Assembly: GCA_051530055.1 (NCBI GenBank)
Contig: CM121341.1
Span: forward strand, 6,488,784 to 6,552,783
Length of the DNA stretch: 64,000 nt
Direction: 5' to 3'
DNA from: Neoechinorhynchus agilis
Taxonomy: Eukaryota > Animalia > Acanthocephala
Both the position numbers and the translations under genes were made by a program. Numbering within the stretch: the stretch's first letter is position 1; each line of letters begins with the position of its first letter. Below the pieces are notes generated by a model that saw only the letters and a list, made by a program, of their open reading frames with translations, ran no database searches and had not been told where the DNA came from. Below are positions 8,724-46,059 of this stretch, in pieces.

Positions 8724-9923
8724 ATGAATTTCCAACTCTTTGTCTTAAGTTTTCTATTTGGCCTACTGGTTTACGGAGATGAAATACTGTCAGACAAATG
8801 CATTATCCTAGATCTGATTAGAGTGGATTTTTCGATTCAGTGTGGTTCCAGCCATGACAATGCCACTACACTTATTGAAGCTTTAAATACAAAAGTAAAT
8901 GAATCAGTAGTCAGACTTTCCATTACAGGTGTTGGTATCGATAAAATTCCAAATAATCTATCTGACATACTACCAAATGTTACAACCTTAAAGCTTGGAA
9001 ATCCACCTTCAACAAAGTATGAGATATGCACCGGAAAATGTACAAGCAAGTTCTATAACATTGAAAGACTTGAGTTGATAAATATGAATATAAGTGAAAT
9101 GGAATTCACTACACCGCATCCAAATCTCAAAGATTTAAGAATTTTTGGTGGAGAGATGGCCCAACTGGATAAATCATTTGGAACAAAGCTTCCTAACCTT
9201 GAATGGCTCATTATTATCTATAGTAAACTGTCGAGTCTTGGCGTAATCAAAAATATTTGCTCACTTCGGCACTTACTCTTGGATGAAAATAATATAACTT
9301 CACTCGATATTGACAACGCAACTTGTTTCCAAAACCTTATCGGGCTTACTCTGTACGGAAACGCGATTGATTCGGTGACAATCGATCCCAGCGCTGTATC
9401 ACAACTCAAATATCTTCTAATGGATTTCCATGGCGATCTTAATCAATTAATTAAAAGTCTGAACTTACCAGAACTGACAAGCTTGAGTGTAAGAAAGTCG
9501 AATAGTAAGATATTTAATGCTTCTAACCTGGAAAAGCTACCTAAACTGAAAGGTTTGTATTTTGAGGATGGCAAATTGGAAAGAGTGCCGATGGGTAACC
9601 AACAGACTAAGGAAAATATATTGATCCTTAGCCTTGCAAATAACAATATCAATATTGTAAATGAATCGGATTTTGTAGGATGGACAAATCTACGTCAACT
9701 TTATTTAAATCAAAACAACATCAAGAACTTATCATCGAATTCATTCTCGAAGCTGATTAGTTTATGGTTTCTTGATTTAAGCAACAACTTTATGACGGAA
9801 TCATACACCAGTGCTTTCCTAGGTCTACCAAGTTCGACAACAGTGTTCCTTGGCGGGAATCCAGTAACTACTATTCCGCCATCTATTCTTGCACCTCTAA
9901 CGAGTAACAACCAACCGGAATAA
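8724..9923 (+). CDS. Secreted leucine-rich repeat protein, paralog 1 (399 aa, intronless)
   Basis: Hydrophobic signal peptide MNFQLFVLSFLFGLLVYG, Cys-containing N-cap, about a dozen LxxLxLxxN repeats and many N-glycosylation sequons. No TM or GPI-like tail. Confidence 0.92.
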   Translation: MNFQLFVLSFLFGLLVYGDEILSDKCIILDLIRVDFSIQCGSSHDNATTLIEALNTKVNESVVRLSITGVGIDKIPNNLSDILPNVTTLKLGNPPSTKYEICTGKCTSKFYNIERLELINMNISEMEFTTPHPNLKDLRIFGGEMAQLDKSFGTKLPNLEWLIIIYSKLSSLGVIKNICSLRHLLLDENNITSLDIDNATCFQNLIGLTLYGNAIDSVTIDPSAVSQLKYLLMDFHGDLNQLIKSLNLPELTSLSVRKSNSKIFNASNLEKLPKLKGLYFEDGKLERVPMGNQQTKENILILSLANNNINIVNESDFVGWTNLRQLYLNQNNIKNLSSNSFSKLISLWFLDLSNNFMTESYTSAFLGLPSSTTVFLGGNPVTTIPPSILAPLTSNNQPE

Positions 9924-10783
9924 AATCCACAAATGGAAAAAGGTCAATAAATTAAATGACGCTTTACTGTTGAGTTGTGTGCTTAAATCGTTAAATCGCA
10001 TTCCCAAGTTCATCGAATTTCGAAATCGATGAGCATGCAATAATAATTCGATGCCATTTTCATCCGAAACTCCCTTTAAAGTAAAATCATTCCATTCTCG
10101 CCTGGCTCTCCTACTTTTCTCACATTCGATGCAAAGTATCTTTACGGCAATTTATTTCATTTCTATTGCTGGATAAATTCATAGCCGTCAACTATTAGTT
10201 TAAATTAATTTTAGTTGGTATTAGAATTTTGAATAATACTTGGTTCGATTCTACTTCGTGTTCTTAATGTCTTCGACGGAGATCGAAATTGTTAGCATAA
10301 GACATTTTCATGGTAACGAGTGAGCGTATTATATTTTATGAAAGCACTGAGGCTAATTATCGATATTCGCTTATGTTTTTCCCTATTTTATTCTGATTTT
10401 CAACGCTAATGAACATTATGTTTGAATGAAGAAAGATGGACGGTGATTGGCTATTTGTTCGATTAAATGGAGAAATTACTTAAAGTAGGATTTACCAATT
10501 TCAACGATTAAGTACCCGGATATTTTACAACAGAAAAAAGATTGTATATGACGTGGAGATCCAGTCGCTTTAATATCTCGAAAACTTAAGAACGGATTCC
10601 GAGTGAGGTTACCTCAACACGAGTTTCAAGAAAAAAATGTCTTAAAATTTTGCAAGAACGAATATGATGTCAGATAACCTTTACTATGTGAGGTAACTTC
10701 AACACGAGTCCCATGCAAACATTTATAAAAAATTTGGTATAAAACGCGAGACAAGACTCGTAGTCCTTGACTAAAATCGTGCA

Positions 10784-11941
10784 ATGAATCTCCAACTCTT
10801 TGTCTTAAGTTTTCTATTCGGTCTACTAGTTTACGGAGATGAAGGCACGTCAAGCAAATGCATTATCATATATCCGATTGAAGTAAATCTTTCAATTCTG
10901 TGTGGTTTCAGCCATGGCAATGCCACGACACTTATTGAAGCATTAAATTCAAAAGCAAATGAATCAGTAGTCAGTCTTGCAATTGCAGGTGTTGGTATCG
11001 ATGAAATTCCAACCAATCTATCGGACATACTACCAAGCGTAACCACCTTAAAGCTTGGATATCCGCCTTCAATAAAGTTCGGGATATGCACCGGAGAATG
11101 CACAAACAAGTTCTATAACATTGAGAGACTTGAGTTGATAAATATGAATATAAGTGAAATGGAATTCAATAATTCGCTTCCAAATCTCAAATATTTAAAA
11201 ATTGTAGGTGGAGAGATGGCACAACTGGATAAATCATTTGGAATAAAACTTCCTAATCTTAGAAGTCTCTCTATTACTTCTAGTAAACTGTCAAGTCTTG
11301 GAGCAATCAAAAATATTTGTTCACTGTGGTTCTTAAACTTGCGTGAAAATAAGATAACTTCAATTGATATTGACAACACAACTCGTTTCCCATATCTTAT
11401 GGTTCTCGATCTGGACGGAAACGCCATTGAATCTGTTGCAATCGATCACAGCGCCCTACCAGAACTCATAAATCTTAATATTGATTTCCTCGGCGATCTT
11501 AATCAATTAATTACAGGTCTGAACTTACCAGAGCTGACAAGCTTGAGGGTAAGAAAGTCGAATAGTAAGATACTTAATGTTCCTAACCTCGAAAAACTAC
11601 CTAAGCTGAAAGATTTGCATTTTGAGGAAGGCAAATTGGAAAGAGTGCCGATTGGTAACAAACAGACTAAGGAAAATATATCATTTCTTAGCCTTGCAAA
11701 TAACAATATCAGTATTGTAAATGAATCGGATTTTGAAGGATGGACGAATCTACGCCAACTTTATTTAAATCAGAACAACATCAAGAAGTTATCATCGAAT
11801 TCATTCTCGAAGCTGATTAGTTTATGGTTTCTTGATTTAAGAAACAACTCTATTTCGGAATTACACAAAGATGCTTTCCTAGGTCTACCAAGTTCCACAA
11901 CAGTGTTCCTTGACGGAAATCCGATAACTACTATTCAGTAA
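10784..11941 (+). CDS. Secreted LRR protein, paralog 2 (385 aa)
   Basis: Same architecture as paralog 1. An early stop removes the last ~14 residues found in paralogs 1 and 3. Confidence 0.92.
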   Translation: MNLQLFVLSFLFGLLVYGDEGTSSKCIIIYPIEVNLSILCGFSHGNATTLIEALNSKANESVVSLAIAGVGIDEIPTNLSDILPSVTTLKLGYPPSIKFGICTGECTNKFYNIERLELINMNISEMEFNNSLPNLKYLKIVGGEMAQLDKSFGIKLPNLRSLSITSSKLSSLGAIKNICSLWFLNLRENKITSIDIDNTTRFPYLMVLDLDGNAIESVAIDHSALPELINLNIDFLGDLNQLITGLNLPELTSLRVRKSNSKILNVPNLEKLPKLKDLHFEEGKLERVPIGNKQTKENISFLSLANNNISIVNESDFEGWTNLRQLYLNQNNIKKLSSNSFSKLISLWFLDLRNNSISELHKDAFLGLPSSTTVFLDGNPITTIQ

Positions 11942-12849
11942 ACCATTCATGCAGACGTGACGAGTAAAAGCAAACCGGAATAAAATCCACAAATGGAAAA
12001 GATAAATCAATTAAATAACGCCTTACTGTTGAGTTGTGTGCTGAAATCGTTAAATCGCGTTACCAAAGTCATCGAATTTCGAAATCGATGAGCATGCAAA
12101 AACAATACAATGCCATGTTTATTTGAAACTCTTTTTAAAGTGAAATCACTTACTTTATTCTCGTTTTCCTCTCCTAATTTTTTCGCATTCCATGCAAAGT
12201 TTGTTAAATCTTTACAGCCATTCATTTCATTTCTATTGCTGAATAAAATCATAGCATTTTACCATTAGTTTAAATTAATTTTAATTAGTGTTATAATTTT
12301 TGAATTTGGTTCGATTCTACTTCGTGTTCTTAATGTCTTCGACGGAGATCGAAATTGTTAGCATAAGACATTTTCATGGTAACGAGTGAGCGTATTATAT
12401 TTTATGAAAGCACTGAGGCTAATTATCGATATTCGCTTATGTTTTTCCCTATTTTATTCTGATTTTCAACGCTAATGAACATTATGTTTGAATGAAGAAA
12501 GATGGACGGTGATTGGCTATTTGTTCGATTAAATGGAGAAATTACTTAAAGTAGGATTTACCAATTTCAACGATTAAGTACCCGGATATTTTACAACAGA
12601 AAAAAGATTGTATGTGACGTGGAGATCCAGTCGCTTTAATATCTCGAAAACTTAAGAACGGATTCGGAGTGAGGTTACCTCAACACGAGTTTCAAGAAAA
12701 AAATGTCTTAAAATTTTGCAAGAACGAATATGATGTCAGATAACCTTTACTATGTGAGGTAACTTCAACACGAGTCCCATGCAAACATTTATAAAAAATT
12801 TGGTATAAAACGCGAGACAAGACTCGTAGTCCTTGACTAAAATCGTGCA

Positions 12850-14049
12850 ATGAATCTCCAACTCTTTGTCTTAAGTTTTCTATTTGGCCTACTGGTTTAC
12901 GCAGATGAAGGCACGTCAAACAAATGCACTTCTATATATCCGATTGAGGTGGATTTTTCGATTCAGTGTAGTTCCAGCCATGACAATGCCACTACACTTA
13001 TTGAAGCTTTAAATTCGAAAGCAAATGAATCAGTAGTCAGTCTTTCAATTACAGGTGTTGGTATCGATGAAATTCCAACCAATCTACCTGACCTACTACC
13101 AAGCGTAACCACCTTAAAGCTTGGATATCCACCTTCAAAGGAATATGAGATATGCACCGGAGAATGCACAAACAAGTTCTATAACATTGAGAGACTTGAG
13201 TTGATAAATATGAATATATTTGAAATGGAATTCACTACACCGCATCCAAATCTCAAATATTTAACAATAGTTGGTGGAAAGATCGCACAATTGGATAAAT
13301 CATTTGGGACAAAACTTCCTAATCTTAAAAGTCTCTCTATTACTTCTAGTAAACTGTCAAGCCTTGCAGTAATCAAAAAGATATGTTCACTTCGGATCTT
13401 AAACCTGCGTGAAAATAAGATAACTTCACTCGATATTGACAAAGCAACTTGTTTCCAAAACCTCATCGAACTTACTCTGCACGGAAATGCTATTGATTCG
13501 GTCACAATCGATCACGGCGCTCTACTCCAACTCAAATATCTTCTAATGGATTTCCATGGCGATCTGAATCAATTAATCAAAAATTTGAAAATTCCGAGAC
13601 TGAAAATATTGAGTGTAAGAAAAACGAACAGTACGATATTTTATGTTTCGAACCTGGAAAACTTGCCTAAGCTGAAAGGTTTGTATTTTGAGGAAGGCAA
13701 ATTGGAAAGAGTGCCGATTGGTAACAAACAGACTAAGGAAAATATATTGATCCTTAGCCTTGCAAATAACAATATCAATATTGTAAACGAATCGGATTTT
13801 GAAGGATGGACGAATCTTCATCTACTTTATTTAGATCGAAACAACATCAAGAAGTTATCATCGAATTCATTCTCGAAGATGGTCAATTTAAGGGTTCTTG
13901 ATTTAAGAAACAACTCTATTTCGGAATTACACAAAGATGCTTTCCTAGGTCTACCAAGTTCCACAACAGTGTTCCTTGACGGAAATCCGATAACTACTAT
14001 TCCGCCATCTATTCTTGCCAATGTGACGAGTAAAAGCAAACCGGAATAA
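12850..14049 (+). CDS. Secreted LRR protein, paralog 3 (399 aa); tandem unit with paralog 2, period 2066 bp
   Basis: Same architecture. The upstream ~540 bp is near-identical to that of paralog 2. Confidence 0.92.
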   Translation: MNLQLFVLSFLFGLLVYADEGTSNKCTSIYPIEVDFSIQCSSSHDNATTLIEALNSKANESVVSLSITGVGIDEIPTNLPDLLPSVTTLKLGYPPSKEYEICTGECTNKFYNIERLELINMNIFEMEFTTPHPNLKYLTIVGGKIAQLDKSFGTKLPNLKSLSITSSKLSSLAVIKKICSLRILNLRENKITSLDIDKATCFQNLIELTLHGNAIDSVTIDHGALLQLKYLLMDFHGDLNQLIKNLKIPRLKILSVRKTNSTIFYVSNLENLPKLKGLYFEEGKLERVPIGNKQTKENILILSLANNNINIVNESDFEGWTNLHLLYLDRNNIKKLSSNSFSKMVNLRVLDLRNNSISELHKDAFLGLPSSTTVFLDGNPITTIPPSILANVTSKSKPE

Positions 14050-17550: not shown

Positions 17551-17626
17551 ACGAAACAATAACCTGATCTGGAAGAAACCTAAACGATTTCACTTAAAAG
17601 AATGTCGCTGAGACCCGTGTGGACCG

Positions 17627-19269: not shown

Positions 19270-20490
19270 TCAATGCCCCAAGACCGTCCGCTTAAAAGTT
19301 TGTACATCCCTCTGGGTTCTCCGATACCTCCAGGAGGCTAAACTCATGAGCGAGTTTCCTCCTTTCAGCAGTATTTCGTTCCCTTTGATGTGGGTCATTG
19401 GCGGTAACGGATTCGAGCCCGTTGACCCTAACTGGGATCTGGAGCATTAGTCCCCTTGAGCACCTCAGCACTCTACGGAATGTACAAACTTCGCCACTTT
19501 GGCCTGGATTAGTGTTCAATGCCCCAAGACCGTCCGCTTAAAAGTTTGTACATCCCTCTGGGTTCTCCGATACCTCCATGAGGCTAAACTCATGAGTGAG
19601 TTTCCTCCTTTCAGCAGTATTTCGTTCCCTTTGATGTGGGTCATTGGCGGTAACGGATTCGAGCCCGTTGACCCTAACTGGGATCTGGAGCATTAGTCCC
19701 CTTGAGCACCTCAGCACTCTACGGAATGTACAAACTTCGCCACTTTGGCCTGGATTAGCGTTCAATGCCCCAAGACCGTCCGCTTAAAAGTTTGTACATC
19801 CCTCTGGGTTCTCCGATACCTCCAGGAGGCTAAACTCATGAGCGAGTTTCCTCCTTTCAGCAGTATTTCGTTCCCTTTGATGTGGGTCATTGGCGGTAAC
19901 GGATTCGAACCCGTTGACCCTAACTGGGATCTGGAGCATTAGTCCCCTTGAGCACCTCAGCACTCTACGGAATGTACAAACTTCGCCACTTTGGCCTGGA
20001 TTAGCGTTCAATGCCCCAAGACCGTCCGCTTAAAAGTTTGTACATCCCTCTGGGTTCTCCGATACCTCCAGGAGGCTAAACTCATGAGTGAGTTTCCTCC
20101 TTTCAGCAGTATTTCGTTCCCTTTGATGTGGGTCATTGGCGGTAACGGATTCGAACCCGTTGACCCTAACTGGGATCTGGAGCATTAGTCCCCTTGAGCA
20201 CCTCAGCACTCTACGGAATGTACAAACTTCGCCACTTTGGCCTGGATTAGCGTTCAATGCCCCAAGACCGTCCGCTTAAAAGTTTGTACATCCCTCTGGG
20301 TTCTCCGATACCTCCAGGAGGCTAAACTCATGAGTGAGTTTCCTCCTTTCAGCAGTATTTCGTTCCCTTTGATGTGGGTCATTGGCGGTAACGGATTCGA
20401 ACCCGTTGACCCTAACTGGGATCTGGAGCATTAGTCCCCTTGAGCACCTCAGCACTCTACGGAATGTGCAAACTTCGCCACTTTGGCCTG
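19270..20490 (-). repeat. Tandem array of 5 x 246-bp units, each a putative Pol III-type structured RNA gene or SINE-like unit
   Basis: Exact 246-bp period. Minus strand carries an A-box-like TGGCGAAGTTTG, B-box GGTTCGAATCC (units 3-5; GGCTCGAATCC in units 1-2), a TTTT terminator and complementary 5'/3' ends. Confidence 0.9.
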
Positions 20491-21256
20491 GAAAGCTTTC
20501 CCATTATAGCGGTCTTATTAGTGGCTCAGCGGGTAGTCTTTGGATAGATTTTTTTTCCATACACGGCCAAATGGATACACTGTCCACGGATTTCGCGCGG
20601 GGAAGCGCTGGTCTGCGCTCAATCTTGGGGCAAAATTGGTACCAATAAGAAATCATCATTTAAAATTAGGACGAACTACTTGTCACCGAATATTACTATC
20701 TTTCATTAATTTCTTTCAAAGGTGATTAAATTTTATTCCACAAAGGAATCACATTTCGGGGTATTAGTATTTAATCGTCGAAATTACTAAATCCTACTTT
20801 AATTAGTTTCTCAATTTAATCGAGCAAATAGCCAATCAACGTACATCTTTCCTCTATTGGATTTTTAACGGTCCAAAAAGCAACAAACGTACTCATTCAA
20901 TAATAATGCTCATTAATCTGGAAAATTAGTATAAAACGGGGAAAACATCAGCGAATATCGATATTTGGCCTCACTGCGCTTATAAGATATAACTCACTCT
21001 CGCGTTCCCATTAAAATGTCAAAATCAAAAATTCACAAATAACTTTAAACTTTTTTTTCACCACAGCACGCAATCGTAATTCTTCTAAAAGATCAGATAT
21101 AAAAAATCGATCTGCATTGGTGTTCATTGTAAATTGGGTCTTCGTTCCAATCATTTAAAGGCATCTGAATATTCCAATAAGATTCAACGAGAGTTGTGTC
21201 GCTTTTTGCTTGCTTATTGTAGCAACTCTGTAAATCACAGTAAATGCTTCCATGAG

Positions 21257-21963
21257 CTACGGAATCGCCAAATTTCTATTGTACTGATGGGGCCAATAGG
21301 CGTTTGCGGTTTCGTTCTGAAAATGATTCGTGCCACAAAAGTAATAGTCGTTTGCGTGGTAATATTCAGCCGAAAAATAATGATGCTGTACGTCCGAAAT
21401 CTTCGCAGGATTTCCAATGTGATTGTTCATGTCGCTGCCGCAAACAATTTTCCCCACAGTTTGCTTTCTATCTTTAAAGCGACGGTTTCCAAACCACGAC
21501 TAAAAACGCTTCTGACAAACAATATTTCCGAAATCTCGACAAACCTTCACATTTTTTGTTGGTATTTGTAATTGAAGTGAAATGTCGTTTTGTGTTTCTT
21601 TACTGGGCAATGGATTCGAACGATAAAACTCCTCCAATATCGCTATCTGCTGCTTCGTATATTTCAATCTCGGATTTTTATGTGAGCGGAAGGAGGTAAT
21701 GTTCTTATGCCTAAGGCAAAATTATTAATATTTAATTTAAAACGCAAACCTTTTCAATATTTTGGTTACACAACTGTGAGAAACCCTCGTCGTTTCCGCA
21801 ATCGCGAATTTCGGCAATCCTGCATTTGACAATCTTATTATTTCTCGTTTCAAAAAATCACATAAGAGTTTCCTCTGACATACGGCCGTCCCATTTGATT
21901 CAAGTTCCTTCATTCGAAAATAATAATTCCTTGAAAAGAGATCAAATTCTTACCGTAAAACAT
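21257..21963 (-). pseudogene. Pax-like PAI-homeodomain gene, copy 2 (frameshifted in exon 2)
   Basis: Same exon layout as 7385-8130. Three small indels within ~60 bp of exon 2 give an immediate TGA. These could be consensus errors. Confidence 0.7.
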
Positions 21964-22644
21964 TTCTATGAAAACGAGTGAGCAAATTATATTTTATAAG
22001 AACCGTGAAGCTACATATCAGTCGCTAATGCTTTCTCCATTTTATACTGATTTTTCACGCTAATGAACATTATCTTTGAATGTAGTAGTTTATTGTTTTT
22101 TTGACCATTAAGAAATCCATTAGAAAAAAGATGGACGGTGATTGGCTATTTGCTTGATTAAATGGAGAAACTAATTAAAGTAGGAGGTAATGATTTCGGC
22201 GATTGAATACCAATACTTTCAAATGTGATTTACGATGCAAATTGATTCCTTTATATTATTACATTTCGTGCCTTATCAGTGCTTATCATCCTCGACATGC
22301 CACAATCAAACAACTATTAGAAGTGTCCATTGACTTTATTTGAGGCTCTCAGAATACCAAAATAGAAAAGAGCTTGTCACTGACGTAGACACCAGTCTCG
22401 GTTACACCTTGCGAGATAACCTTAACTACGTAAAGTAACCTCAACACAGTCCCAAGCAAACATTTCTAAAAATTTAGTATAAAACGCGAGACAAGACTCG
22501 TAGTCGTCTAAGACTACATTTAGACAATGAATCTCCAACTTTTACGATGTGAGGTAACCTCAACACGAGTCCCAAGTAAACATTTCTAAAAAATTTAGTA
22601 TAAAACGCGAGGCAAGACCCGTAGTCCTCGACTAAAATCGTGCA

Positions 22645-23796
22645 ATGAATATCCTATTCTTTGTCTTAAGTTTTCTATTTGGCCTACTGGTTTACGGAGA
22701 TACAAGACCGTCAGACAAATGCGTTATCTTACATTCGAATAGAGTAAATTTTGCGATTCAGTGTAGTTCCCGCCATGACAATGCCACTACACTTATTGAA
22801 GCTTTAAACTCGAAAGCAAATGAATCAGTAGTCAGTCTTTCAATTGCAGGTGTTGGTATCGATGAAATTCCAAATAATCTATCTGACCTACTACCAAATG
22901 TTACCACCTTAAAGCTTAAAAATGCACCATCAAAGGAATATGAGATATGCACGAATATTTTCAAGAATATTGAGGTACTTGAGTTGATAAATATGAATAT
23001 AAGTGAAATGAAATTTACTACACCGCATCCAAATCTCATAGAATTAACAATAGTAGGTGGGGAGATGACAAAACTGGATAAATCATTTGGAACAAACCTT
23101 CCTAATCTTGAAAGTCTCTCTATTACCTCCAGTAAACTGTCAAGTCTTGGAGCAATCAAAAAGATATGTTCACTTCGGATCTTAAACCTGCGTGAAAATA
23201 AGATAACTTCACTCGATATTGACAACGCGACTCGTTTCCCATATCTTATGGTTCTCGATCTGGACGGAAACGCCATTGAATCTGTTGCAATCGATCACAG
23301 CGCCCTACCAGAACTCATAAATCTTTATATTGATTTCCACGGCGATCTTAATCAATTAATTACAGGTCTGAACTTACCAGAGCTAAAAGAATTGATGGTG
23401 AGAAAGTCGAATAGTAAGATACTTAATGTTCCTAACCTGGAAAACCTGCCTAAGCTGAAAGATTTGCATTTTGAGGAAGGCAAATTGGAAAGCGTGCCGA
23501 TTGGTAACAAACAGACTAATGCTACGATATCATTTCTTAGCCTTGCAAATAACAATATCAGTATTGTAAATGAATCGGATTTTGAAGGATGGACGAATCT
23601 ACGTATACTTCATTTAAATCAAAACAACATCAAGAAGTTATCATCGAATTCATTTTCGAAGCTAATTAATTTAAGATTTCTTTATTTAAGAAACAACTCT
23701 ATTTCGGAATCATACAACGACACTTTCCTAGGTCTACCAAGTCCCACATCAGTGTTCCTTGGCGGAAATCCGATAACTTCTGGACGCGGCGAGTAA
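22645..23796 (+). CDS. Secreted LRR protein, paralog 4 (383 aa)
   Basis: Signal peptide + LRRs; a mosaic of segments shared with paralogs 2, 3, 5 and 7. Confidence 0.92.
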   Translation: MNILFFVLSFLFGLLVYGDTRPSDKCVILHSNRVNFAIQCSSRHDNATTLIEALNSKANESVVSLSIAGVGIDEIPNNLSDLLPNVTTLKLKNAPSKEYEICTNIFKNIEVLELINMNISEMKFTTPHPNLIELTIVGGEMTKLDKSFGTNLPNLESLSITSSKLSSLGAIKKICSLRILNLRENKITSLDIDNATRFPYLMVLDLDGNAIESVAIDHSALPELINLYIDFHGDLNQLITGLNLPELKELMVRKSNSKILNVPNLENLPKLKDLHFEEGKLESVPIGNKQTNATISFLSLANNNISIVNESDFEGWTNLRILHLNQNNIKKLSSNSFSKLINLRFLYLRNNSISESYNDTFLGLPSPTSVFLGGNPITSGRGE

Positions 23797-24313
23797 AAAC
23801 CAACCGGAATGAAATCCACAAATGGAAAAAGGTCAATAAATTAAATGACGCTTTACTTTTGAGTTGTGTGCTTAAATCGTGTTACCAAAGTCATCGAATT
23901 TTTAAATCAGTGAGAATGCAATAATAATTCGATGCCATTTTCATCCGAAACTCCTTTTAAAGTAAAATCACTCCATTCTCGCCTGGCTCTCCTACTTTTC
24001 TCACATTCGATGCAAAGTATCTTTACGGCAATTTATTTCATTTCCAAATGCACGAAGAGGAGGACCCATGTCCCCGTTTGGGTGCTCGTAAACACTCGAG
24101 TTCTGATTGGGTCTTCAAATTTAATTGTCTGAGCGCCGATAAAAACACATTGATTTTTTGATTGAGATGCAAAGATTCGATTTGCGTTCACGCTTTTTTC
24201 TCGGCCCATTCGCGCACAAAGTCGAGACGCGATTTAAAAACTTTTGGGAACAAAATTCAAAACTTTTTTTCGATTCCAATGAAAGAGTTGGAGATGTTTT
24301 GAGCAAGAATACA

Positions 24314-26228
24314 ATGGTATCAAAGTTTGGCTCTTGTAGGCACGAAATTATTAATTATGATCATCAAAAGTATAGAATCGATAATTGTGACGTCACTCGA
24401 ACGCTTGAAAATTACGTGCCGATAGTCGTGTTCAGTGACGTCACCATAAGTCTCGCGAATCTGGAAGAACGCTGCATCGATAGAAAAAATCGATGGCAAA
24501 TAAAGCACGAAAATGCGCGAGGACGGCATGATAACGCGATCGATGTGTCGGAGGTTGGTTCAAACGAGCGAGAATCCTGACGATGCGGATCTATCGATTC
24601 CTATTGAACGTCGAATGATTTCCGATCGGTCGGAGTGCTTGTGCTATGCAAGTAAACAAGAAGTTTTGAAGAAGACTGGATGTGATATTGGTAATCGGTA
24701 TCTTTTTTTGTGAATGTTTATCCTCGCTTACAAATCTTACAATAGGTCCTCAACGCCCACAAATCGGGCTGCTTTATACATTAAATCACAAAAGGAAATT
24801 CCTCCAGAATTAAGCTTTAGAGCTAAGCGAGCTCATTATAACTACGCAGAATCGTAAGTATCGTGGCTGTACCGTTTTAATTTTGTTTTCTTCTTAAAAA
24901 GAGAAAGCTATTTGTTGCCAGACACAGAAGATTTGAACAGATCAAATTCGATGGTCCGCGATAGTTTTAGACGAAGGCTAGTGTCTCAGCGGCATAATTT
25001 AGCCAACCGACATTTAGAATTCGAAATGGTGATAGAATCCAAAAAACCTCGTTAAACTATCCAAATATTTTAATGTAATTTTTTGCCTTTATTCCCCGTT
25101 TGAAGAGATTTTTTGGAATATGATTATCACCTTTAAACAAAAACTAGTACTGGGAATTGTTGAGATCTTTTTCTCTCACTCTGAACGTCGGTTCTATAAA
25201 AGAAGTGTCATTAACTGGGACCGCAATGAATCTCATGGTTACTCGGATCCAATGGTTCATTTCAATGCTTTACATTTCGATCACTGACTACGTTAGACTA
25301 ATCCGAAACGACACAACAATTGGTCGAATAGAGCTTTCAGGCTCAAAAAACAAGCTGTCATTAATTCTGAAAGTGTTGACTGCTCAACTCCTAGGCATTT
25401 TGTTGATTGTGTTTCTCACGTCTGGTAAGTTGTTTTACACGGTTTCCAAAGTAGAAAAAATGACATATTTGAAGCCAATAAAGACAATGCTGAGATGATT
25501 GTCTATGATAAATCACAAAACGGACAAAGCACCGAGGGTTCCCCGAAGGAACAGCAGGAAACGCAAGTTCAATTGAATACGTCTTTTATAAATTACGCCA
25601 GATCGAGATACGGTTCCGTAGATCTCATCAATCCACGCATTCTCTATCGCTTCTTTTTAAAGTTTCATACATTGAAGCCAGTTCTGATACCAAATCCGTC
25701 TGCAAATCAGTCTCATCGGTTCGATGGCGGCGGTGGTGGCCGTTTACTCGATCGACCTATCTGATTCAGGCAGATCCAACCAATATAATAAAGGTTTGAT
25801 ATAATGTTTAATGAGAAGATCCTCTATGTGTTTGAATAGAGCAACTTGGAACCTGGATTTTGTTGGTGTTTTGTGGGATCCCACGGATCCGTGGATATTT
25901 CGTGGGTACACAATATAACGATCACCGGTTGGACGTATAAACATTGCCGTCGATACGAAACGAAAACTCCGGATTCGGCACCTAGGCAAATGTCGCTATT
26001 TGTAAGTGTACAAGTAATTCCCTTTAACTCCATTATCTACTGTTTTAGAACCAAAGACTCAACCAGAGCATTGGAGATTTCGAATTCCTTTACGAAGATT
26101 ATAAGCAATCGTTCAGTCTAAAGAATACGGTTTACACTGATCAAATGCAAATCAAGGTCCTTTCTAATTGGGGGAATCAGTATTTCACCTGCTTATACAA
26201 AGTCAAGTTCGTGGGTCCGAACATGTGA
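24314..26228 (+). CDS. SUN-domain nuclear envelope protein (multi-exon; start codon uncertain)
   Basis: Spliced exons give INYARSRY, PGFCWCFVGSHG, DSAPRQMSLF and SNWGNQYFTCLYKVKFVG, matching the SUN domain. Short GT-AG introns. Confidence 0.82.
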
Positions 26229-29322: not shown

Positions 29323-30009
29323 TTCTATGAAAACGAGTGAGCAAATTATATTTTATAAGAACCGTGAAGCTACATATCGGTATTCGCTAATGCTTTCTCC
29401 ATTTTATACTGATTTTTCACGCTAATGAACATTATCTTTGAATGTAGTAGTTTATTGTTTTTTTGACCATTAAGAAATCCATTAGAAAAAAGATGGACGG
29501 TGATTGGCTATTTGCTCGATTAAATGGAGAAACTAATTAAAGTAGGAGGTAATGATTTCGGCGATTAAATACCAATACTTTCAAATGTGATTTACGATGC
29601 AAATTGATTCCTTTATATTATTACATTTCGTGCCTTATCAGTGCTTATCATCCTCGACATGCCACAATCAAACAACTATTAGAAGTGTCCATTTGAGACT
29701 TTATTTGAGGCTCTAAGAATACCAAAATAGAAAAGGGCTTGTCACTGACGTAGACATCCAGTCTCGGTTACACCTTGCGAGATAACCTTAACTACGTAAA
29801 GTAACCTCAACACGAGTCCCAAGCAAACATTTCTAAAAAATTTAGTATAAAACGCGAGACAAGACTCGTAGTCGTCGACTAAAACTGGGCAATGAATCTC
29901 CAACTTTTACGATGTGAGGTAACCTCAACACGAGTCCCAAGCAAACATTTCTAAAAAATTTAGTATAAAACGCGAGGCAAGACCCGTAGTCCTCGACTAA
30001 AATCGTGCA

Positions 30010-30960
30010 ATGAATATCCTATTCTTTGTCTTAAGTTTTCTATTTGGCCTACTGGTTTACGGAGATACAAGACCGTCAGACAAATGCGTTATCTTACATT
30101 CGAATAGAGTAAATTTTGCGATTCAGTGTAGTTCCAGCCATGACAATGCCACTACACTTATTGAAGTTTTAAATTCGAAAGCAAATGGACCAGCAACCAG
30201 TCTTTCAATTGCAGGTGTTGGTATCGATGAGATTCCAAATAATCTATCTGACCTACTACCAAATGTTACCAACTTAAGGCTTGAAAATGCACCATCAAAG
30301 GAATATGCGATGTGCACGAATATTTTCAAGAATATTCAGAGACTTGAGTTGATAAATATGAATATATTTGAAATGGAATTCATGCAGCCGCATCCAAATC
30401 TCATAGAATTAACAATAGTAGGTGGGGAGATGACAAAACTGGATAAATCATTTGGGACAAAACTTCCTAATCTTACAATTCTCTCTATTACTTCTGATTT
30501 CCTCGGCGATCTAAATCAATTAATCCAAAATCTGAACTTACCAGAGCTGACAAGCTTGACTGTCAGAAAAACGAACAGTAAGATACTTAATGTTCCTAAC
30601 CTGGAAAACCTGCCTAAGCTGAAATATTTGTATTTTGAGGATGGCAAATTGGAAAGCGTGCCGATTGGTAACAAACAGACTAATGCTACGATATCATTTC
30701 TTAGCCTTGCAAATAACAATATCAGTATTGTAAATGAATCGGATTTTGAAGGATGGACGAATCTACGTGAACTTTATTTAAATCAAAACAACATCAAGAA
30801 GTTATCATCGAATTCATTTTCGAAGCTGATTAGTTTATGGTTTCTAGATTTAAGAAACAACTCTATTTCGGAATCATACAACGACACTTTCCTGGGTCTA
30901 CGAAGTCCCATATTAGTGCTCGTTGGCGGAAATCCGATAACTTCTGGACGCGGCGAGTAA
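30010..30960 (+). CDS. Secreted LRR protein, paralog 5 (316 aa; in-frame loss of ~3 LRR modules)
   Basis: 67 aa shorter than paralog 4. The junction LSITS-DFLGD fuses two beta-strands. Confidence 0.9.
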   Translation: MNILFFVLSFLFGLLVYGDTRPSDKCVILHSNRVNFAIQCSSSHDNATTLIEVLNSKANGPATSLSIAGVGIDEIPNNLSDLLPNVTNLRLENAPSKEYAMCTNIFKNIQRLELINMNIFEMEFMQPHPNLIELTIVGGEMTKLDKSFGTKLPNLTILSITSDFLGDLNQLIQNLNLPELTSLTVRKTNSKILNVPNLENLPKLKYLYFEDGKLESVPIGNKQTNATISFLSLANNNISIVNESDFEGWTNLRELYLNQNNIKKLSSNSFSKLISLWFLDLRNNSISESYNDTFLGLRSPILVLVGGNPITSGRGE

Positions 30961-33197: not shown

Positions 33198-33914
33198 ATG
33201 AATATCCTATTCTTCGTCTTAAGTTTTCTATTTGGCCTACAAGGCGGATTTCCAAGCTTTAAGGTTGTAACGTTTGGTAGAATGTCAGATAAATTATTTG
33301 GAATTTCAATGAATCAGTAGTCAGACTTTCCATTACAGGTGTTGGTATCGATGAAATTCCAAATAATCTATCTGACATACTGCCAAAAGTTGCCACCTTA
33401 AAGCTTAAAAATGCACCTTCAAAGGAATATGAGATATCCACAAACAAGTTCTATAACATTGAGAGACTTGAGTTGATAAATATGAATATAAGTGAAATGG
33501 AATTCACTACACCGCATCCAAATCTCAAAGATTTAAAAAAAAATTTGGTAGAGAGATGGCACAACTGGATAAATCATTTGTAACAAACCTTCCTAACCTT
33601 GAATGGCTCATTATTCTTTATTGTAAACTGTCAAGTCTTGGAGTAATTAAAAATATTTGCTCACTTCGGCACTTACTCCTGGATGAAAATAATATAACTT
33701 CACTCGATATTGACAACGCAACTTGTTTACAAAACCTTGTGATGTTCGAATTGAACGCTAACGCGATTGAATCAATCGCAATCGATCACGACGCTCTACC
33801 CCAACTAAAATATCTTCTAATGGATTTCCATTGTGATCTTAATCAATTGATCAAACACCTGAACCTACCACAACTATTAGAATTGACTGTGAGAAAGACG
33901 AACAGTACGATATC
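33198..33914 (+). pseudogene. LRR paralog 6, rearranged pseudogene (inverted insert, frameshift, 3' truncation)
   Basis: A partial signal peptide is followed by a 66-bp inverted LRR-gene segment, then LRR sequence resumes (ORF 33556-33942) and breaks at about 33914. Confidence 0.88.
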
Positions 33915-39362: not shown

Positions 39363-42130
39363 TCATCTTCTATCACGGGCATTCTGGATAATTTGTATTG
39401 TATGCAACGGTACTTTCCTACGTTGCACCGTAGGTATAAGCCCGTCAAATAGAATTAGACTCCGCAAGGGACTAGAATACACGACAGCAGTCCTGTTATG
39501 CGGGCAATTCGCGTCTCTTAAAATCAGGTCATCGTATGTACGACAGTTCCCTTTGCCTTTACGATACAATGTCGTTGGCTTCCAGAAAAGGGACTGTTGC
39601 ATTACCTGTGGGCAAGATTCCTCGGACCGAACTATATTGCCCGTGAACTGCAGTCGTCTGCGGCGCAAATATTCACTGGGCGGTTGGACTCCGGCTCTCT
39701 TATACAGTGCTTTGTTGGTCACTTTATCTGACCATCTGACCTTGAACGCCGCACGTAAGAGAGATGAATGATTTTGGTCCAAATGCCTCGTCGGCGTTGG
39801 TGACAGTGTCCAGGTCTCTGCATTGTAGTAGAGAATGCTCTCAATTAGAGCCATGAGCAGCTGCGAACGGAGTTCATCTGGCAAAGACTCACTGTCAAAC
39901 AGTGGCTTAAGTTGCCCCATTGCTCTCCAAGCTATAGCTCTCCGTCGGCTGACATCCGCACTCACCTCAGGAACGACAGCTCCCAGATAGACATACCGCT
40001 CTATCTGTTTTAATTGCTCAACGCCATTCGGCCCTTCGCCAGAGATTGTATGCGCGACATGCGGAATCGTCAAGAATTCCGTCTTTTTCGAGTTGATGGT
40101 CGGACCAATCATACTCGCCCTCTCGCACAGTCTATTTAGCATGCGTTGAGCTCCTTCGACTGTTGAGGACATCAATACGATGTCGTCGGCATATGCCATG
40201 TAGGAGGCGCGTATCTCAGGATACCTGCGAATTCTTTTCCTCAACAGAAGAAATTCAACTTCATCATTCGGTAGTGCCCATCTCATTACCTAATCAAGCA
40301 CCAAGATGAAGAGGAAAGTAGCCAATGTGTCGCCCTGCAGAACACCTGAAGTGGTGGAAAAGTATTCGGTCAAACCGTCAGCTGTCTTGACGGCGGACCT
40401 TGTGTTTTTATATAATGCCATAACGGATGTGACAATGATCGGCGGCACTCCATATTCCTTTAAGATACCGCCAATCATCTTTCGATTTACCGAATCGAAA
40501 GCTCGACGGAAATCAACAAATACCAGCGTCACACCCGTTTGATGAATTCGTGCCTCCTTGAGGATCCTCCTCAAAGCCAATATGTGCTCTGTGGTGCCTC
40601 GACCTTTCCTGAAGCCGTTCTGTTCAATTCTTAGAAACCGTTCGAGGATTGGCTGAATTCGGCGTCTCAAAATGCTGCTGAAAAGTTTTGCCGTGTTGGA
40701 CATCAAGGATATACCTCTGTAGTTCTCCACCTTTGTCAAGCAGCATTTCTTGGGGATCAATGTTAAATGCGCCGTTTGCCAAATTTGAGGTACTGAGCCA
40801 CCATTCATTATGCCATTCATTATCGGTATGATTTTTCTGGCAATAGATTCAAACCTCAGTACCTCTGCCACTATCTCATCTGGGCCTGATGCACGTCCCG
40901 CACGCATCATTTTCGCCGCAGCGATCGCTTCCTTCAAGGAAATCGGTCAAGTGAAGTATGCCTCAGTGCTTGGGACGATTGTGCCTTTTGGAAGTGCAGG
41001 ACTCACTTCCAAGGACGATAATGGCGAATTGAGAATTTCCGCAAAATAATTTGCGATTCTCTTTTTCTGATTTCCGGGGAGGGACCTTCAATCAAAGTTG
41101 GCTGTCTTTGGGATATTCCTGTGAGAGTGTTTATCGCTCTCCATGATAAGGAGGTACGAACAAAACCTTCCTTATATGCGATCCCGCGAACTGCATCCTC
41201 TATCGAAGCTTTTTGCTTTTCATTATAGAGGTTGGCAAGTTCAAGACTTGCAATGCGAGCCTCAGATCGTTTTCCTCTTTTTCTTAGAGTTTTGATCTGC
41301 TCAGCCATTGCCATAAATTCACAGTCCTCCTGCCATATAACCTTTGCAGCTTTTATACGCCTCATTTTTGGGAGGGTTTTTTCGGCCGTTTCGGTCACTG
41401 CATCGCAGATTGACTTGTAATAAAAATCAATATCCGTTTCAGCAGCTGGCATCGAGCTCAGTTGATTCTCTAGTTCGATATCGAACTCTTTCCTCCTCAT
41501 TAGCGAGGGCGCCATAGAACGGACGTGGACGATGTTGAGGCGTACGGAACAACGAGTCACTCATGCTCAACTGACACATCACCAACTTATGGTCGGTTGG
41601 CAGCCCATCAACTGTGAATGTGTCAGCGTTTTTGACCCGACATTTTTCCCTACGTCTCAACAATATATGGTCAAGCTGAGCTAAGCGTCTCTTGGGATTT
41701 TTCCCATGGCATGTTTGGACGGATTCTTTTGACCCATAAACGACGCCAAACGCCAATGACGCTTCCGGAATAAAGTGTTAGCAGACACGAGATCATGCCG
41801 TTCCAGCGCCTCAACCAAGTACCGGCCGTTCCGATTCTCGTCTTTCAACACATATAGCGATCTTTTGGAATGCCGTAAAATCGCGTTGAAGTCACCGGCT
41901 ATTAGGAGGGTGTCTCTGTTCGGTACATCATCTAATGCTTCGGCTAAATTTCCATAAAATCCTTCAACCGCCTCTTCATCCGACGAGGAGGTCGGTGAAT
42001 ATACGCCAAAAGCATAGAGATTTGTCGATCGAAGCTTAATGCTGACACGAAGGATTCGGTCAGTTATAATACTGCATAGTGCTGAGTTTCGGCGGCGGGG
42101 TGATGAACAAACGCCTACACCTCCATTTCC
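39363..42130 (-). mobile_element. RTE-type LINE, largely complete ORF2 (APE + RT) with few disruptions
   Basis: APE motifs GGVG, GVYSPT and IAGDFNA; RT motifs NYRGISL, QNGFRKGR, FVDFRRAFDSV, GVLQGDTLA and YADDIVL. A premature TAG lies at about 40290. Confidence 0.9.
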
Positions 42131-44292: not shown

Positions 44293-44904
44293 TTCTATGA
44301 AAACGAGTGAGCAAATTATATTTTATAAGAACCGTGAAGCTAAATATCGGTATTCGCTAATGCTTTCTCCATTTTATACTGATTTTTCACGCTAATGAAC
44401 ATTATCTTTGAATGTAGTAGTTTATTGTTTTTTTGACCATTAAGAAATCCATTAGAAAAAAGATGGACGGTGATTGGCTATTTGCTCGATTGAATGGAGA
44501 AACTAATTAAAGTAGGAGGTAATAATTTCGGCGATTAAATACCAATACTTTCAAATGTGATTTACGATGCAAACTGATTCCTTTATATTATTACATTTCG
44601 CGCCTTATCAAGGTGTTTTAATGGAGTGCTTATCATCCTCGACATGCCACAATCAAACAACTGTTAGAAGTGTCCATTTGAGACTTTATTTGAGGCTCTA
44701 AGAATACCAAAATAGAAAAGAGCTTGTCACTGACGTAGACATCCAGTCTCGGTTACACCTCAAAAACATAAGAACGAATTCTAAGCGGGGTTACTTTTTT
44801 TTATAATGTGAGGCAAGCTCAACACGAGTCTCATGAAAAAATATCTTGAAGCATTTGGTTTAAAAGGCTTGACAAGGCTCGTAGTCCTGGACTAAAATCG
44901 TGCA

Positions 44905-46059
44905 ATGAATTTCCAACTCTTTGTCTTAAGTTTTCTGTTTGGCCTACTAGTTTACGGAGATGAAAGACTGTCAGACAAATGCGTTATCTTACATTCGAAT
45001 AGAGTAAATTTTGCGATTCAGTGTGGTTCCAGCCATGACAATGCCACTACACTTATTGAAGCTTTAAATACAAAAGCAAATGAATCAGTAGTCAGACTTT
45101 CCATTACAGGTGTTGGTATCGATGAAATTCCAAATAATCTATATGACATACTGCCAAAAGTTACCACCTTAAAGCTTAAAAATGCACCTTCAAAGGAATA
45201 TGAGATATGCACCGGAGAATGCACAAACAAATTCTATAACATTGAGAGACTTGAGTTGATAAATACGAATATAAGTAAAATGAAATTCACTACACCGCAT
45301 CCAAATCTCAAAGATTTAAGAATTTTTGGTGGAGAGATGGCACAACTGGATAAATCATTTGGAACAAACCTTCCTAACCTTGAATGGCTCATTATTCTTT
45401 ATTGTAAACTGTCGAGTCTTGGCGTAATCAAAAATATTTGCTCACTTCGGCACTTACTCTTGGATGAAAATAATATAACTTCACTCGATATTGACAACGC
45501 AACTTGTTTCCAAAACTTAACAAGACTTTCTCTGTTCGGAAACGCGATTGAATCGATCACCATCGATCGCAGCGCTGTATCACAACTCAAATATCTTCTA
45601 ATGGATTTCCATGGCGATCTTAATCAATTAATTAAAAGTCTGAACTTACCAGAGCTGACAAGCTTGAGTGTAAGAAAGTCGAATAGTACGACATTTAATG
45701 TTCCTAACCTGGAAAAGCTACCTAAACTGAAAGGTTTGTATTTTGAGGAAGGCAAATTGGAAAGAGTGCCGATCGGTAACGATCAGACTAAGGAAAATAT
45801 ATTGATCCTTAGCCTTGTAAATAACAATATCAGTATTGTAAATGAATCGGATTTTGTAGGATGGACGAATCTAACTGTGCTTTATTTAAATCAAAACAAC
45901 ATCAAGAAGTTATCATCGAATTCATTTTCGAAGCTGATTAGTTTATGGTTTCTAGATTTAAGAAACAACTCTATTACGGAATCATACACCAGTGCTTTCC
46001 TAGGTCTACCAAGTTCTACAAGAGTGTTCCTTGGCGGGAATCCGATAACTACTATGTAA
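44905..46059 (+). CDS. Secreted LRR protein, paralog 7 (384 aa)
   Basis: Signal peptide + LRRs; mostly paralog-1-like with the N-cap of paralogs 4/5. Confidence 0.92.
   Translation: MNFQLFVLSFLFGLLVYGDERLSDKCVILHSNRVNFAIQCGSSHDNATTLIEALNTKANESVVRLSITGVGIDEIPNNLYDILPKVTTLKLKNAPSKEYEICTGECTNKFYNIERLELINTNISKMKFTTPHPNLKDLRIFGGEMAQLDKSFGTNLPNLEWLIILYCKLSSLGVIKNICSLRHLLLDENNITSLDIDNATCFQNLTRLSLFGNAIESITIDRSAVSQLKYLLMDFHGDLNQLIKSLNLPELTSLSVRKSNSTTFNVPNLEKLPKLKGLYFEEGKLERVPIGNDQTKENILILSLVNNNISIVNESDFVGWTNLTVLYLNQNNIKKLSSNSFSKLISLWFLDLRNNSITESYTSAFLGLPSSTRVFLGGNPITTM

What the first reader, a model, noticed from the sequence alone, without database searches (positions are those of the whole stretch)
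8724..46059. Seven intronless secreted LRR paralogs diversified as patchwork on the concave beta-strand face
Seen: differences cluster in the xxLxLxx positions (LEWLIIIYS / LRSLSITSS; LRHLLLDEN / LWFLNLREN / LRILNLREN; LIGLTLYGN / LMVLDLDGN / LIELTLHGN / LTRLSLFGN / LVMFELNAN) while the framework is conserved. Blocks are shared non-hierarchically: LRR4 has the RFPYLMVLDLDG block of LRR2, the KKICSLRILNL block of LRR3 and the N-cap of LRR5/7. Known: this pattern marks ligand-binding diversification by gene conversion in plant NLRs and, somatically, in agnathan VLRs. Inference: a variable recognition or host-interaction repertoire.
Basis: partly seen in the sequence, partly recalled or inferred. 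Interest (0 to 1): 0.78.

Follow-up and report, generated by a model that had tools for sequence, protein, structure and literature searches.

The report
Fast-diversifying secreted LRR gene cluster
A fish-gut parasitic worm (Neoechinorhynchus agilis) carries a species-restricted cluster of transcribed, single-exon genes for secreted leucine-rich-repeat proteins; the copies swap pieces with each other and change fastest on their predicted binding face, as expected of molecules that must recognise changing partners.

Summary
The window has six intact single-ORF LRR genes (A–F) and one broken copy. They belong to a family of 15 intact paralogs in Neoechinorhynchus agilis (Acanthocephala), 12 of them within about 140 kb.

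- **Architecture:** signal peptide, two-Cys N-cap, 14 LRRs, no LRRCT, TM or other domain.
- **Where they differ:** amino-acid differences concentrate on the x positions of LxxLxLxxN (0.50 against 0.25 elsewhere and 0.12 in the core). The AlphaFold model places these on the concave beta-strands.
- **Selection:** omega there is 1.1 by NG86 (CI includes 1) and 1.6–1.75 by a pairwise codon model (bootstrap CI 1.37–2.12). The rest of the LRR domain gives 0.5–0.6.
- **Mosaicism:** PHI z = -17. 14 of 91 pairs share perfectly identical tracts of 60–254 bp. Strongly supported clades conflict between gene segments. Flanks are 98–99.6% identical beside coding regions that are 87–93% identical.
- **Expression:** RNA-like runs cover A, B and C but not the spacers, with no internal splice joints.

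The best reading is a germline repertoire shuffled by interparalog gene conversion and under diversifying selection. The ligand (host, microbe or mate) is untested. VLR-like somatic assembly has no support.

No full-length relative was found outside this species. Other notes of this scan touch these genes on this window only.

The parts
8724..9923 (+). LRR paralog A, 399 aa: signal peptide, N-cap (Cys26/Cys40), 14 LRRs
   Evidence: ORF. Pfam LRR_8 2.9e-24. AF2 model pLDDT 84.7. Covered by RNA-like runs X2 and X4.
10784..11941 (+). LRR paralog B, 385 aa. Mosaic: H-like over nt 1-600 (98-100%), D-like over about 587-720.
   Evidence: An X2 contig at 11274-11546 with no mismatch spans the H-like/D-like junction.
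12850..14049 (+). LRR paralog C, 399 aa
   Evidence: Covered by X2 and X4.
22645..23796 (+). LRR paralog D, 383 aa. The clearest patchwork: K/E, O, K, B, O, E in succession.
30010..30960 (+). LRR paralog E, 316 aa. A recent duplicate of D with an in-frame loss of 67 codons (end of LRR5 to start of LRR8, equivalent to D 23130-23330).
33199..33912 (+). Broken seventh copy (pseudogene fragment): start codon and signal peptide, inverted piece 33236-33307, frameshift near 33540, truncated after LRR9.
44905..46059 (+). LRR paralog F, 384 aa. Nearest to A, with N-cap of the D/E/K type.
10263..10812 (+). Upstream and 5' tract of B. It is near-identical (2 mismatches in 550 columns) to 12329-12878 upstream of C, while the sequence on both sides is 10-25% divergent: a recent conversion tract over the promoter.
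8615..8723 (+). Promoter-proximal region of about 110 nt with a TATA-like GGTATAAAA about 45 nt before the ATG. Conserved upstream of all seven copies (equivalents before 10784, 12850, 22645, 30010, 33199 and 44905).
21263..25615 (+). D duplication unit, matching the E unit at 28619-32780 (96.5% and 98.0% identity either side of E's deletion).
29801..30019 (+). 118-bp tandem duplication of the core promoter plus start codon in front of E. The same duplication lies at 32988-33207 in front of the fragment.

Best explanation
This is a germline multigene family found only in Neoechinorhynchus agilis. Its members are single-exon genes for secreted LRR-only glycoproteins.

**Shown**
- The genome holds 15 intact paralogs and 3-4 fragments, mostly in one array of about 140 kb.
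- Each protein has a signal peptide, a two-Cys hairpin N-cap and 14 LRRs.
- The paralogs exchange 60-250-bp tracts with one another. Partners can lie 45-90 kb apart or in opposite orientation.
- Amino-acid replacements are concentrated on the outward-facing beta-strand positions (x3, x5, x7 and x2 of LxxLxLxxN), mainly in LRR4-9, and on the N-cap hairpin.
- A, B and C are transcribed.

**Inferred**
- The exchange is non-allelic gene conversion or unequal crossing-over.
- Selection favours new and re-assorted concave surfaces, so each worm encodes a panel of related binders with different specificities.
- The ligands are extracellular and variable. Most likely they are host (fish gut or immune) or microbial molecules met at the body surface of a gutless worm living in the intestine.
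For: **Organism and restriction.** All close hits are N. agilis proteins and the next best is a generic LRR protein at 29% identity. A profile search of 1.84 billion cluster representatives found full-length matches only to N. agilis entries.

**Family size and layout.**

**Fold.** The AF2 model has pLDDT 84.7 and pTM 0.82, with strands at motif positions 3-7 of every repeat. Foldseek hits are LRR ectodomains.

**Concave focus.**
- Diversity is 0.497 at x positions, 0.252 elsewhere and 0.117 in the core.
- NG86 omega is 1.09 against 0.47.
- GY94 composite likelihood gives 1.65-1.75 at concave positions, about 0.6 at other positions and 0.27 in the core, under four codon-frequency models.
- Bootstrap CI for concave positions is 1.37-2.12. 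For x3/x5/x7 omega is 2.12 (1.53-2.63), and for position 3 alone 2.9.
- 22 of the 40 top-ranked sites are concave x positions, although these are only 70 of 406 columns.
- A 642-aa LRR subfamily of the same genome shows no concave enrichment (17/105 against 99/529 variable columns).

**Exchange.**
- PHI z = -17.4, and z = -4.0 for third positions only.
- 14 of 91 pairs have identical tracts never matched in 2000 permutations.
- Clades conflict between segments: B+H at 98/100 in one segment against B+D at 100/99 in the next, H+J at 100/98, D+K+O at 100/99.
- Mismatches jump abruptly from 0 to 15-20 per 60 nt.
- B and C are 99.6% identical upstream but 87% in the CDS (dS 0.25). D and E flanks are 98-99.6% identical against 92.7% in the CDS.

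**Expression.** X2 and X4 carry a 46-nt GT..AG joint at 8340/8387 that is absent from the DNA runs, so they behave as RNA. They cover the three ORFs at depth 20-165 and the spacers at 0-13.
Against: - Omega above 1 is not shown by the simple NG86 estimate, whose CI is 0.76-1.56.
- My codon-model CI holds pair distances and kappa fixed and uses non-independent pairs.
- No PAML or HyPhy site test on non-recombinant segments could be run.
- PHI on strictly synonymous sites has no power (28-36 sites, not significant).
- Expression is shown only for A-C, from assembled contigs of runs whose RNA nature is inferred.
- There is no tissue, sex, stage or protein evidence and no ligand.
- Secretion is inferred from sequence alone.
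- Paralog cross-mapping prevented any reading of allelic variation.
Confidence: 0.7

Rival explanations
1. Neutral birth-and-death with relaxed constraint. The x positions vary simply because exposed LRR residues are weakly constrained. Conversion shuffles neutral variants, and there is no adaptive diversification.
For: NG86 concave omega is 1.09 with a CI that includes 1. Whole-gene omega is 0.66. The family includes pseudogene fragments and a deletion variant.
Against: - Codon-model omega is 1.6-1.75, with a bootstrap CI above 1. Position x3 gives 2.9.
- Other exposed (convex or loop) positions stay at about 0.6.
- 15 ORFs are intact and A-C are transcribed.
- A sister LRR subfamily shows no concave enrichment.
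Confidence: 0.15
2. The evolutionary mechanism is the same but the target is endogenous. The proteins act in reproduction (sperm-egg or male-female interaction, copulatory cement) or in worm-worm recognition, and sexual conflict rather than host or microbe drives diversification.
For: Reproductive proteins commonly show omega above 1 (general knowledge). The N. agilis transcriptome is strongly sex-biased, with 30% of transcripts affected (PMC12690905 abstract). Nothing here ties the genes to host contact.
Against: There is no direct evidence either way. A panel of 15 or more shuffled paralogs is more typical of recognition repertoires than of mating proteins (general knowledge). The published study does not mention the family.
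Confidence: 0.15
3. The mosaics are artefacts. Assembly or short-read polishing errors copied sequence between similar paralogs.
For: Paralogs are 84-93% identical, and reads from one copy do lay on another.
Against: - Independent RNA-like contigs match A, B and C without mismatch over 106-273 nt. One spans the B junction.
- WGS depth over the ORFs is near the roughly 33x expected, with no collapse.
- Tracts occur between copies 45-90 kb apart and on different strands.
- Every copy keeps an open frame.
Confidence: 0.03
4. A VLR-like system. Expressed receptors are assembled somatically by copying pieces among these loci.
For: The proteins are LRR-only, vary on the concave face, have a mosaic block structure, and one fragment lies in the array.
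Against: - All genes are complete in the germline and each has its own conserved promoter-proximal region. A-C are transcribed as encoded.
- The window holds only one fragment and no cassette field.
- No APOBEC_N or NAD1 deaminase hit was found in the genome. This is a weak negative.
- There is no LRRCT or stalk.
Confidence: 0.03

Closest known systems
Plant LRR resistance-gene clusters (Cf-4/Cf-9 Hcr9 receptor-like proteins, NLR LRR domains)
   Same: Tandem arrays, sequence exchange between paralogs giving patchworks, and replacement changes concentrated on the solvent-exposed x residues of xxLxLxx. All three were tested here and met.
   Different: This is an animal (acanthocephalan) family with no TM, kinase or NB-ARC part. 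The proteins are LRR-only and secreted, with the 24-residue animal 'typical' repeat type. There is no homology beyond the LRR motif.
Agnathan variable lymphocyte receptors (VLR)
   Same: LRR-only extracellular proteins whose diversity sits on the concave beta-strands and whose sequences are mosaics of LRR modules.
   Different: VLR diversity is somatic. It is built into an incomplete germline gene from hundreds of cassettes with AID-like deaminases. Here the genes are complete and are germline-encoded, A-C are transcribed, there is no cassette field, no LRRCT or stalk, and no deaminase was detected.
Mosquito LRIM1/APL1 secreted LRR immune proteins
   Same: Signal peptide plus an LRR domain. 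The APL1 paralogs are tandem and highly diverse (from my own knowledge).
   Different: LRIMs carry a C-terminal coiled-coil and a double-Cys motif. The model here ends after LRR14 with a short disordered tail.
Lineage-specific LRR expansions in other Syndermata (bdelloid rotifer Adineta vaga)
   Same: A. vaga is reported to have expanded multigene families with LRR repeats in a genome with much gene conversion (PMC3846280).
   Different: No sequence relative of this family was found outside N. agilis. That paper does not describe concave-face diversification.
Animal extracellular LRR proteins (LRRC15, Slit-like, LRRC32, nephrocan) and bacterial internalin or Leptospira LRR proteins
   Same: These are the best sequence hits (29% or less) and the best fold hits (LGR4, LRIG1, InlA, Lingo-1, TLR8, Toll, LIC12759).
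   Different: Similarity is confined to the generic repeats. This family's N-cap and N-terminal half match nothing else, and it has no 4-Cys LRRNT and no LRRCT.

Membership tests
LRR superfamily (Pfam LRR_8 / LRR_4, 'typical' 24-residue type) | Tandem LxxLxLxxN-containing repeats that score above the Pfam gathering cut-offs | tested here: met
   LRR_8 scores 85-95 bits against a cut-off of 27. 14 repeats have periods of 22-27 residues.
LRR superfamily (Pfam LRR_8 / LRR_4, 'typical' 24-residue type) | Curved solenoid with a parallel beta-sheet lining the concave face | tested here: met
   The AF2 model (pLDDT 84.7) has a short strand at motif positions 3-7 of each repeat. At least 500 Foldseek PDB matches at E<=0.001; the 50 listed are LRR proteins. 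This is a prediction, not a solved structure.
Agnathan VLR system | Incomplete germline gene completed somatically from flanking LRR cassettes | tested here: not met
   Six complete ORFs with start, signal peptide, all repeats and a stop. Only one fragment lies in 64 kb. A-C are transcribed as encoded.
Agnathan VLR system | LRRNT and LRRCT cysteine caps plus a stalk or GPI region | tested here: not met
   The N-cap has a single Cys pair (26/40). There is no C-terminal Cys cluster and no hydrophobic tail.
Agnathan VLR system | AID/APOBEC-like cytidine deaminase in the genome | tested here: inconclusive
   No APOBEC_N or NAD1 hit in a six-frame search. The NAD1 control rang nowhere and exons may be split, so this is only a weak negative.
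Plant R-gene-type diversifying LRR cluster (evolutionary mode, not homology) | Tandem array with inter-paralog sequence exchange | tested here: met
Plant R-gene-type diversifying LRR cluster (evolutionary mode, not homology) | dN/dS above 1 on the xxLxLxx solvent-exposed residues | tested here: inconclusive
   Codon model: 1.6-1.75 with CI 1.37-2.12, and 2.9 at x3. NG86: 1.09 with CI 0.76-1.56. Omega is clearly higher than in the rest of the protein by every method.
Plant R-gene-type diversifying LRR cluster (evolutionary mode, not homology) | Signalling part (TM with a short tail, kinase or NB-ARC) | tested here: not met
   Pfam finds only LRR families. So the cluster works like one of these but is not a member.
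Mosquito LRIM/APL1 family | C-terminal coiled-coil with a double-Cys motif | tested here: not met
   No long helix follows LRR14 in the model, and there are no C-terminal Cys residues.
Toll-like receptors | TM segment and cytoplasmic TIR domain | tested here: not met
   The ORFs end after the LRRs. No TIR (PF01582) match was found anywhere in the genome by six-frame search. Genome-wide absence is only a weak negative.

The most novel reading that the evidence does not exclude
Gene conversion among these loci also operates somatically or at very high germline rates. Individual worms, or cell lineages within a worm, would then express LRR mosaics not present in the reference germline. That would be an anticipatory or antigenically variable LRR repertoire in a gutless parasite whose genome gave no TIR match in a six-frame search. 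A weaker version is that the family is the worm's main variable interface with fish immunity.
Probability: 0.05. Interest if true: 0.9.

Novelty: new member of a known kind. Interest (0 to 1): 0.55.

Why it matters
Acanthocephalans are ecologically and economically relevant fish parasites, and almost nothing is known about the molecules at their host interface.

This family is one of the few clear signatures of an arms-race-type repertoire in their very reduced 46-Mb genome:
- It is found only in this species.
- Three members (A-C) are shown to be transcribed.
- It is predicted to be secreted.
- It evolves fastest on its predicted binding face.
- It belongs to a set of roughly 70-80 further single-ORF LRR loci. 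The eight read through are LRR-only, and seven of them start with a signal-like N terminus.
- No TIR domain was detected in the genome.

It gives concrete candidates for host-parasite or microbe-parasite recognition studies. It is also a clean animal example of the sequence exchange plus concave-face selection best known from plant resistance genes.

It does not reveal a new principle.

Tried and rejected
- **Strictly synonymous PHI.** Only 28-36 sites were available, so there was no power and the result was not significant. The third-position PHI and the fully identical tracts carry the argument instead.
- **Variant letters in WGS and RNA reads as alleles or somatic variants.** Rejected. Read laying maps onto the stretch alone, and the variant letters match paralog F/G sequence (for example 9216-9222 gives the LYC type), so this is cross-mapping. 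The joints 8583>10672, 8583>12738 and 11933>9900 are read the same way.
- **PAML, HyPhy, GENECONV, PhiPack.** Not installed. I wrote NG86, a GY94 composite-likelihood estimator, PHI and a GENECONV-like permutation test myself.
- **Profile search of 1.84 billion representatives.** The top 150 are swamped by giant multi-LRR proteins matching only profile positions of about 250-391. Relatives scoring below about 221 bits would be hidden. It therefore excludes only relatives closer than roughly 35-40% identity.
- **Literature.** The N. agilis genome and transcriptome paper and its held supplement do not mention LRR or leucine. A search for Acanthocephala with leucine-rich repeat gave nothing relevant.
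- **Rfam and tRNA scans of the window.** Nothing found.
- **Horizontal transfer from bacteria as the origin of intronless LRR genes.** Considered and rejected. The best hits are metazoan extracellular LRR proteins, the C-terminal repeats are the animal 24-residue type, and the proteins have a eukaryotic signal peptide and sequons.
- **Mapping variability onto 3-D coordinates.** Not possible, because model coordinates are not exposed to scripts. I used the DSSP strand register instead.
- **Expression of D, E and F.** Could not be checked because read laying allows a single call.

Full report
**What is there**

The window is G000:C1:6488784-6552783 of a 46.2-Mb, 102-contig genome. Protein searches identify the genome as Neoechinorhynchus agilis, an acanthocephalan from the gut of mullets (PMC12690905).

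Six intact + strand ORFs of 316-399 aa lie at 8724, 10784, 12850, 22645, 30010 and 44905 (A-F). A seventh copy at about 33199-33912 is broken: it has a start codon and signal peptide, then an inverted piece, a frameshift and a truncation. All score only for LRR families in Pfam.

A six-frame search of the whole genome finds nine more intact paralogs at 63-82% amino-acid identity. Five of them flank the window, so 12 intact genes and two fragments sit within about 140 kb. Four further singles and a frameshifted copy lie elsewhere on three chromosomes.

Roughly 70-80 more distant loci (31% identity or less) give single open frames, mostly of about 400-710 aa. The eight I read through are about 400 or 640-660 aa long. 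Seven of them start with a signal-like N terminus, most share the N-cap layout, and the four scanned against Pfam are LRR-only.

**Architecture**

The 15 intact proteins align without gaps across the LRR domain. Each has:
- a hydrophobic N terminus ending in VYG|DE;
- a beta-hairpin cap with a conserved Cys26/Cys40 pair;
- 14 repeats with periods of 22-27 residues;
- a short tail with no LRRCT, no TM segment and no other domain;
- 6-17 N-glycosylation sequons, six of them conserved.

An AlphaFold2 model of A is confident (pLDDT 84.7, pTM 0.82). It places a strand at positions 3-7 of every LxxLxLxxN motif, so x3, x5 and x7 point out of the concave sheet. Foldseek returns LRR ectodomains at 16-22% identity: LGR4, LRIG1, internalin A, Lingo-1, TLR8, Toll and a Leptospira LRR protein. 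Secretion is inferred from sequence only.

**Is variation focused on the concave face?**

Yes. Mean pairwise amino-acid difference is 0.497 at the 70 x positions, 0.252 at the other 192 LRR positions and 0.117 at the 56 core positions.

| Estimate | Concave x positions | Rest of LRR domain |
|---|---|---|
| NG86 omega | 1.09 (bootstrap CI 0.76-1.56) | 0.47 (0.37-0.59) |
| GY94 composite likelihood, four codon-frequency models | 1.65-1.75 | about 0.6 (other), 0.27 (core) |

- In the NG86 bootstrap, the concave value never fell to or below the rest in 2000 replicates.
- The GY94 estimator shares each pair's distance across partitions. This is justified because concave and other sites are interleaved every 24 residues.
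- Column bootstraps of the GY94 estimate give 1.37-2.12 for concave positions and 2.12 (1.53-2.63) for x3/x5/x7. By motif position, omega is 2.9 at x3, 1.7 at x2, x5 and x7, and 0.7 at x8.
- 22 of the 40 top-ranked sites are concave x positions, and five more lie on the N-cap hairpin.
- The hottest repeats are LRR5-7, with concave dN of 0.6-0.8.
- Each repeat has 9-13 different strand 9-mers among the 15 paralogs.
- As an internal control, four members of the 642-aa subfamily show no concave enrichment: 17/105 against 99/529 variable columns.

Two caveats apply. Omega above 1 depends on the method. My CI also ignores uncertainty in the distances and the non-independence of pairs.

**Is the pattern a patchwork?**

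Yes, strongly.
- **Nearest-neighbour painting.** D switches from K/E (100%, nt 1-240) to O, then K, then B (98%), then O, then E (98-99%). B is H-like (98-100%) up to about nt 600 and then D-like.
- **Mismatch profiles.** Counts jump from 0 to 15-20 per 60 nt.
- **PHI.** z = -17.4 on all informative sites and -4.0 on third positions.
- **GENECONV-like permutation test.** 14 of 91 pairs share identical tracts of 60-254 bp that were never matched in 2000 permutations.
- **Segment trees.** Strongly supported clades conflict: B+H 98/100 against B+D 100/99, H+J 100/98, D+K+O 100/99.
- **Exchange partners.** They lie up to 91 kb apart (B and H) and in opposite orientation (D and K).

Flanks are much more alike than coding regions:

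| Pair | Flank identity | CDS identity | dS |
|---|---|---|---|
| B-C | 99.6% over a sharply bounded 550-bp upstream tract | 87% | 0.25 |
| D-E | 98-99.6% | 92.7% | 0.09 |
| A-F | 96.9% upstream | 93.1% | 0.11 |

Because dS is also high in the coding regions, the contrast reflects exchange with divergent donors. It is not point-mutation selection after a recent duplication.

E additionally lost exactly three repeats in frame.

**Expression and gene structure**

Runs X2 and X4 are labelled only as possibly RNA. They show a 46-nt GT..AG (minus strand) joint at 8340/8387 that the DNA runs X1 and X8 lack. They cover ORFs A, B and C at word depth 20-165 and the two spacers at 0-13, while the DNA runs cover everything. 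I therefore treat them as RNA and A-C as transcribed.

No splice joint lies inside the ORFs. A mismatch-free 273-nt contig (11274-11546) spans B's H-like/D-like junction, which argues against an assembly chimera.

Many variant letters in these runs match paralog F/G, so I attribute them to cross-mapping and make no claim about alleles.

The roughly 110 nt before each ATG, including a TATA-like box, is conserved in all seven copies.

**Comparison with known systems**

The evolutionary mode matches plant Cf-9/NLR-type LRR clusters on three points: tandem array, sequence exchange, and selection on xxLxLxx. The proteins have no signalling part and are not homologous to those families beyond the repeat.

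The VLR analogy holds for the protein surface but not for the mechanism. The genes are complete in the germline, there is no cassette field, there is no LRRCT, and no APOBEC_N or NAD1 hit was found. The deaminase result is a weak negative.

LRIM/APL1-type coiled-coils are absent. No TIR domain was found in the genome (also a weak negative).

LRR multigene expansions and frequent gene conversion are reported for the bdelloid rotifer Adineta vaga (PMC3846280). No relative of this family appears outside N. agilis in either large protein search. The N. agilis genome paper does not mention the family.

**Verdict**

It is best explained as a germline repertoire of secreted LRR binders diversified by interparalog conversion and by selection on the concave face.

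This is a new, species-restricted member of a well-known kind of system. The ligand and biological role (host, microbe or mate) remain open. Somatic diversification is unsupported but was not directly tested.

Noticed in passing
window 7670-8099 (- strand), with copies upstream of D (about 21222-22543) and E (about 28619-29908): A small gene with a paired-box PAI-like exon (7902-8099) and a homeodomain-like exon (7670-7837) lies head-to-head with LRR gene A and is duplicated along with the LRR unit. RNA-like runs show a transcript here with a 46-nt GT..AG intron (8341-8386), which suggests a shared bidirectional promoter region.
   Followed up: partly
window 19270-20492: Five tandem copies of a 246-bp unit at 99% identity. 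There is no Rfam or tRNA match, so the nature of the unit is unknown.
   Followed up: partly
window 29801-30019 and 32988-33207: A 118-bp tandem duplication containing the TATA-like box and the start codon of the LRR gene. It gives an extra upstream ATG followed by a short out-of-context frame.
   Followed up: no
whole genome G000: A six-frame search found no TIR domain (PF01582), yet the genome holds on the order of 90-100 LRR matches. Most of these are single open frames. The eight read through are LRR-only, and seven of them have a signal-like N terminus. They sit in several tandem clusters, for example C2:6.78-6.95 Mb, C1:17.39-17.59 Mb and C2:14.98-15.03 Mb.
   Followed up: partly
L003 and L010 (paralogs I and N, outside the window): Two paralogs end in an odd tyrosine-rich tail (YDYYYYFY and DYYYY).
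   Followed up: no
window 3356-4872: A satellite of 71-bp units (214-bp higher-order period), about 21 copies at 85-92% identity.
   Followed up: no
window 27377-27935 and 52918-53476: A 559-bp dispersed repeat, 99.6% identical between two sites 25 kb apart. Further shared repeats link 35.9-37.5 kb, 48.6-50.3 kb and 56.9-57.7 kb.
   Followed up: no
window 39363-41560 (- strand): Reverse-transcriptase (RVT_1) ORFs of a degraded LINE-like element lying between LRR genes E/G and F.
   Followed up: no
window 691-1584 and 59481-61347: Flanking housekeeping genes: an SRAP/HMCES-like peptidase with an Arg/Ser-rich tail, and exons of a threonyl-tRNA synthetase (TGS and tRNA_SAD domains).
   Followed up: partly
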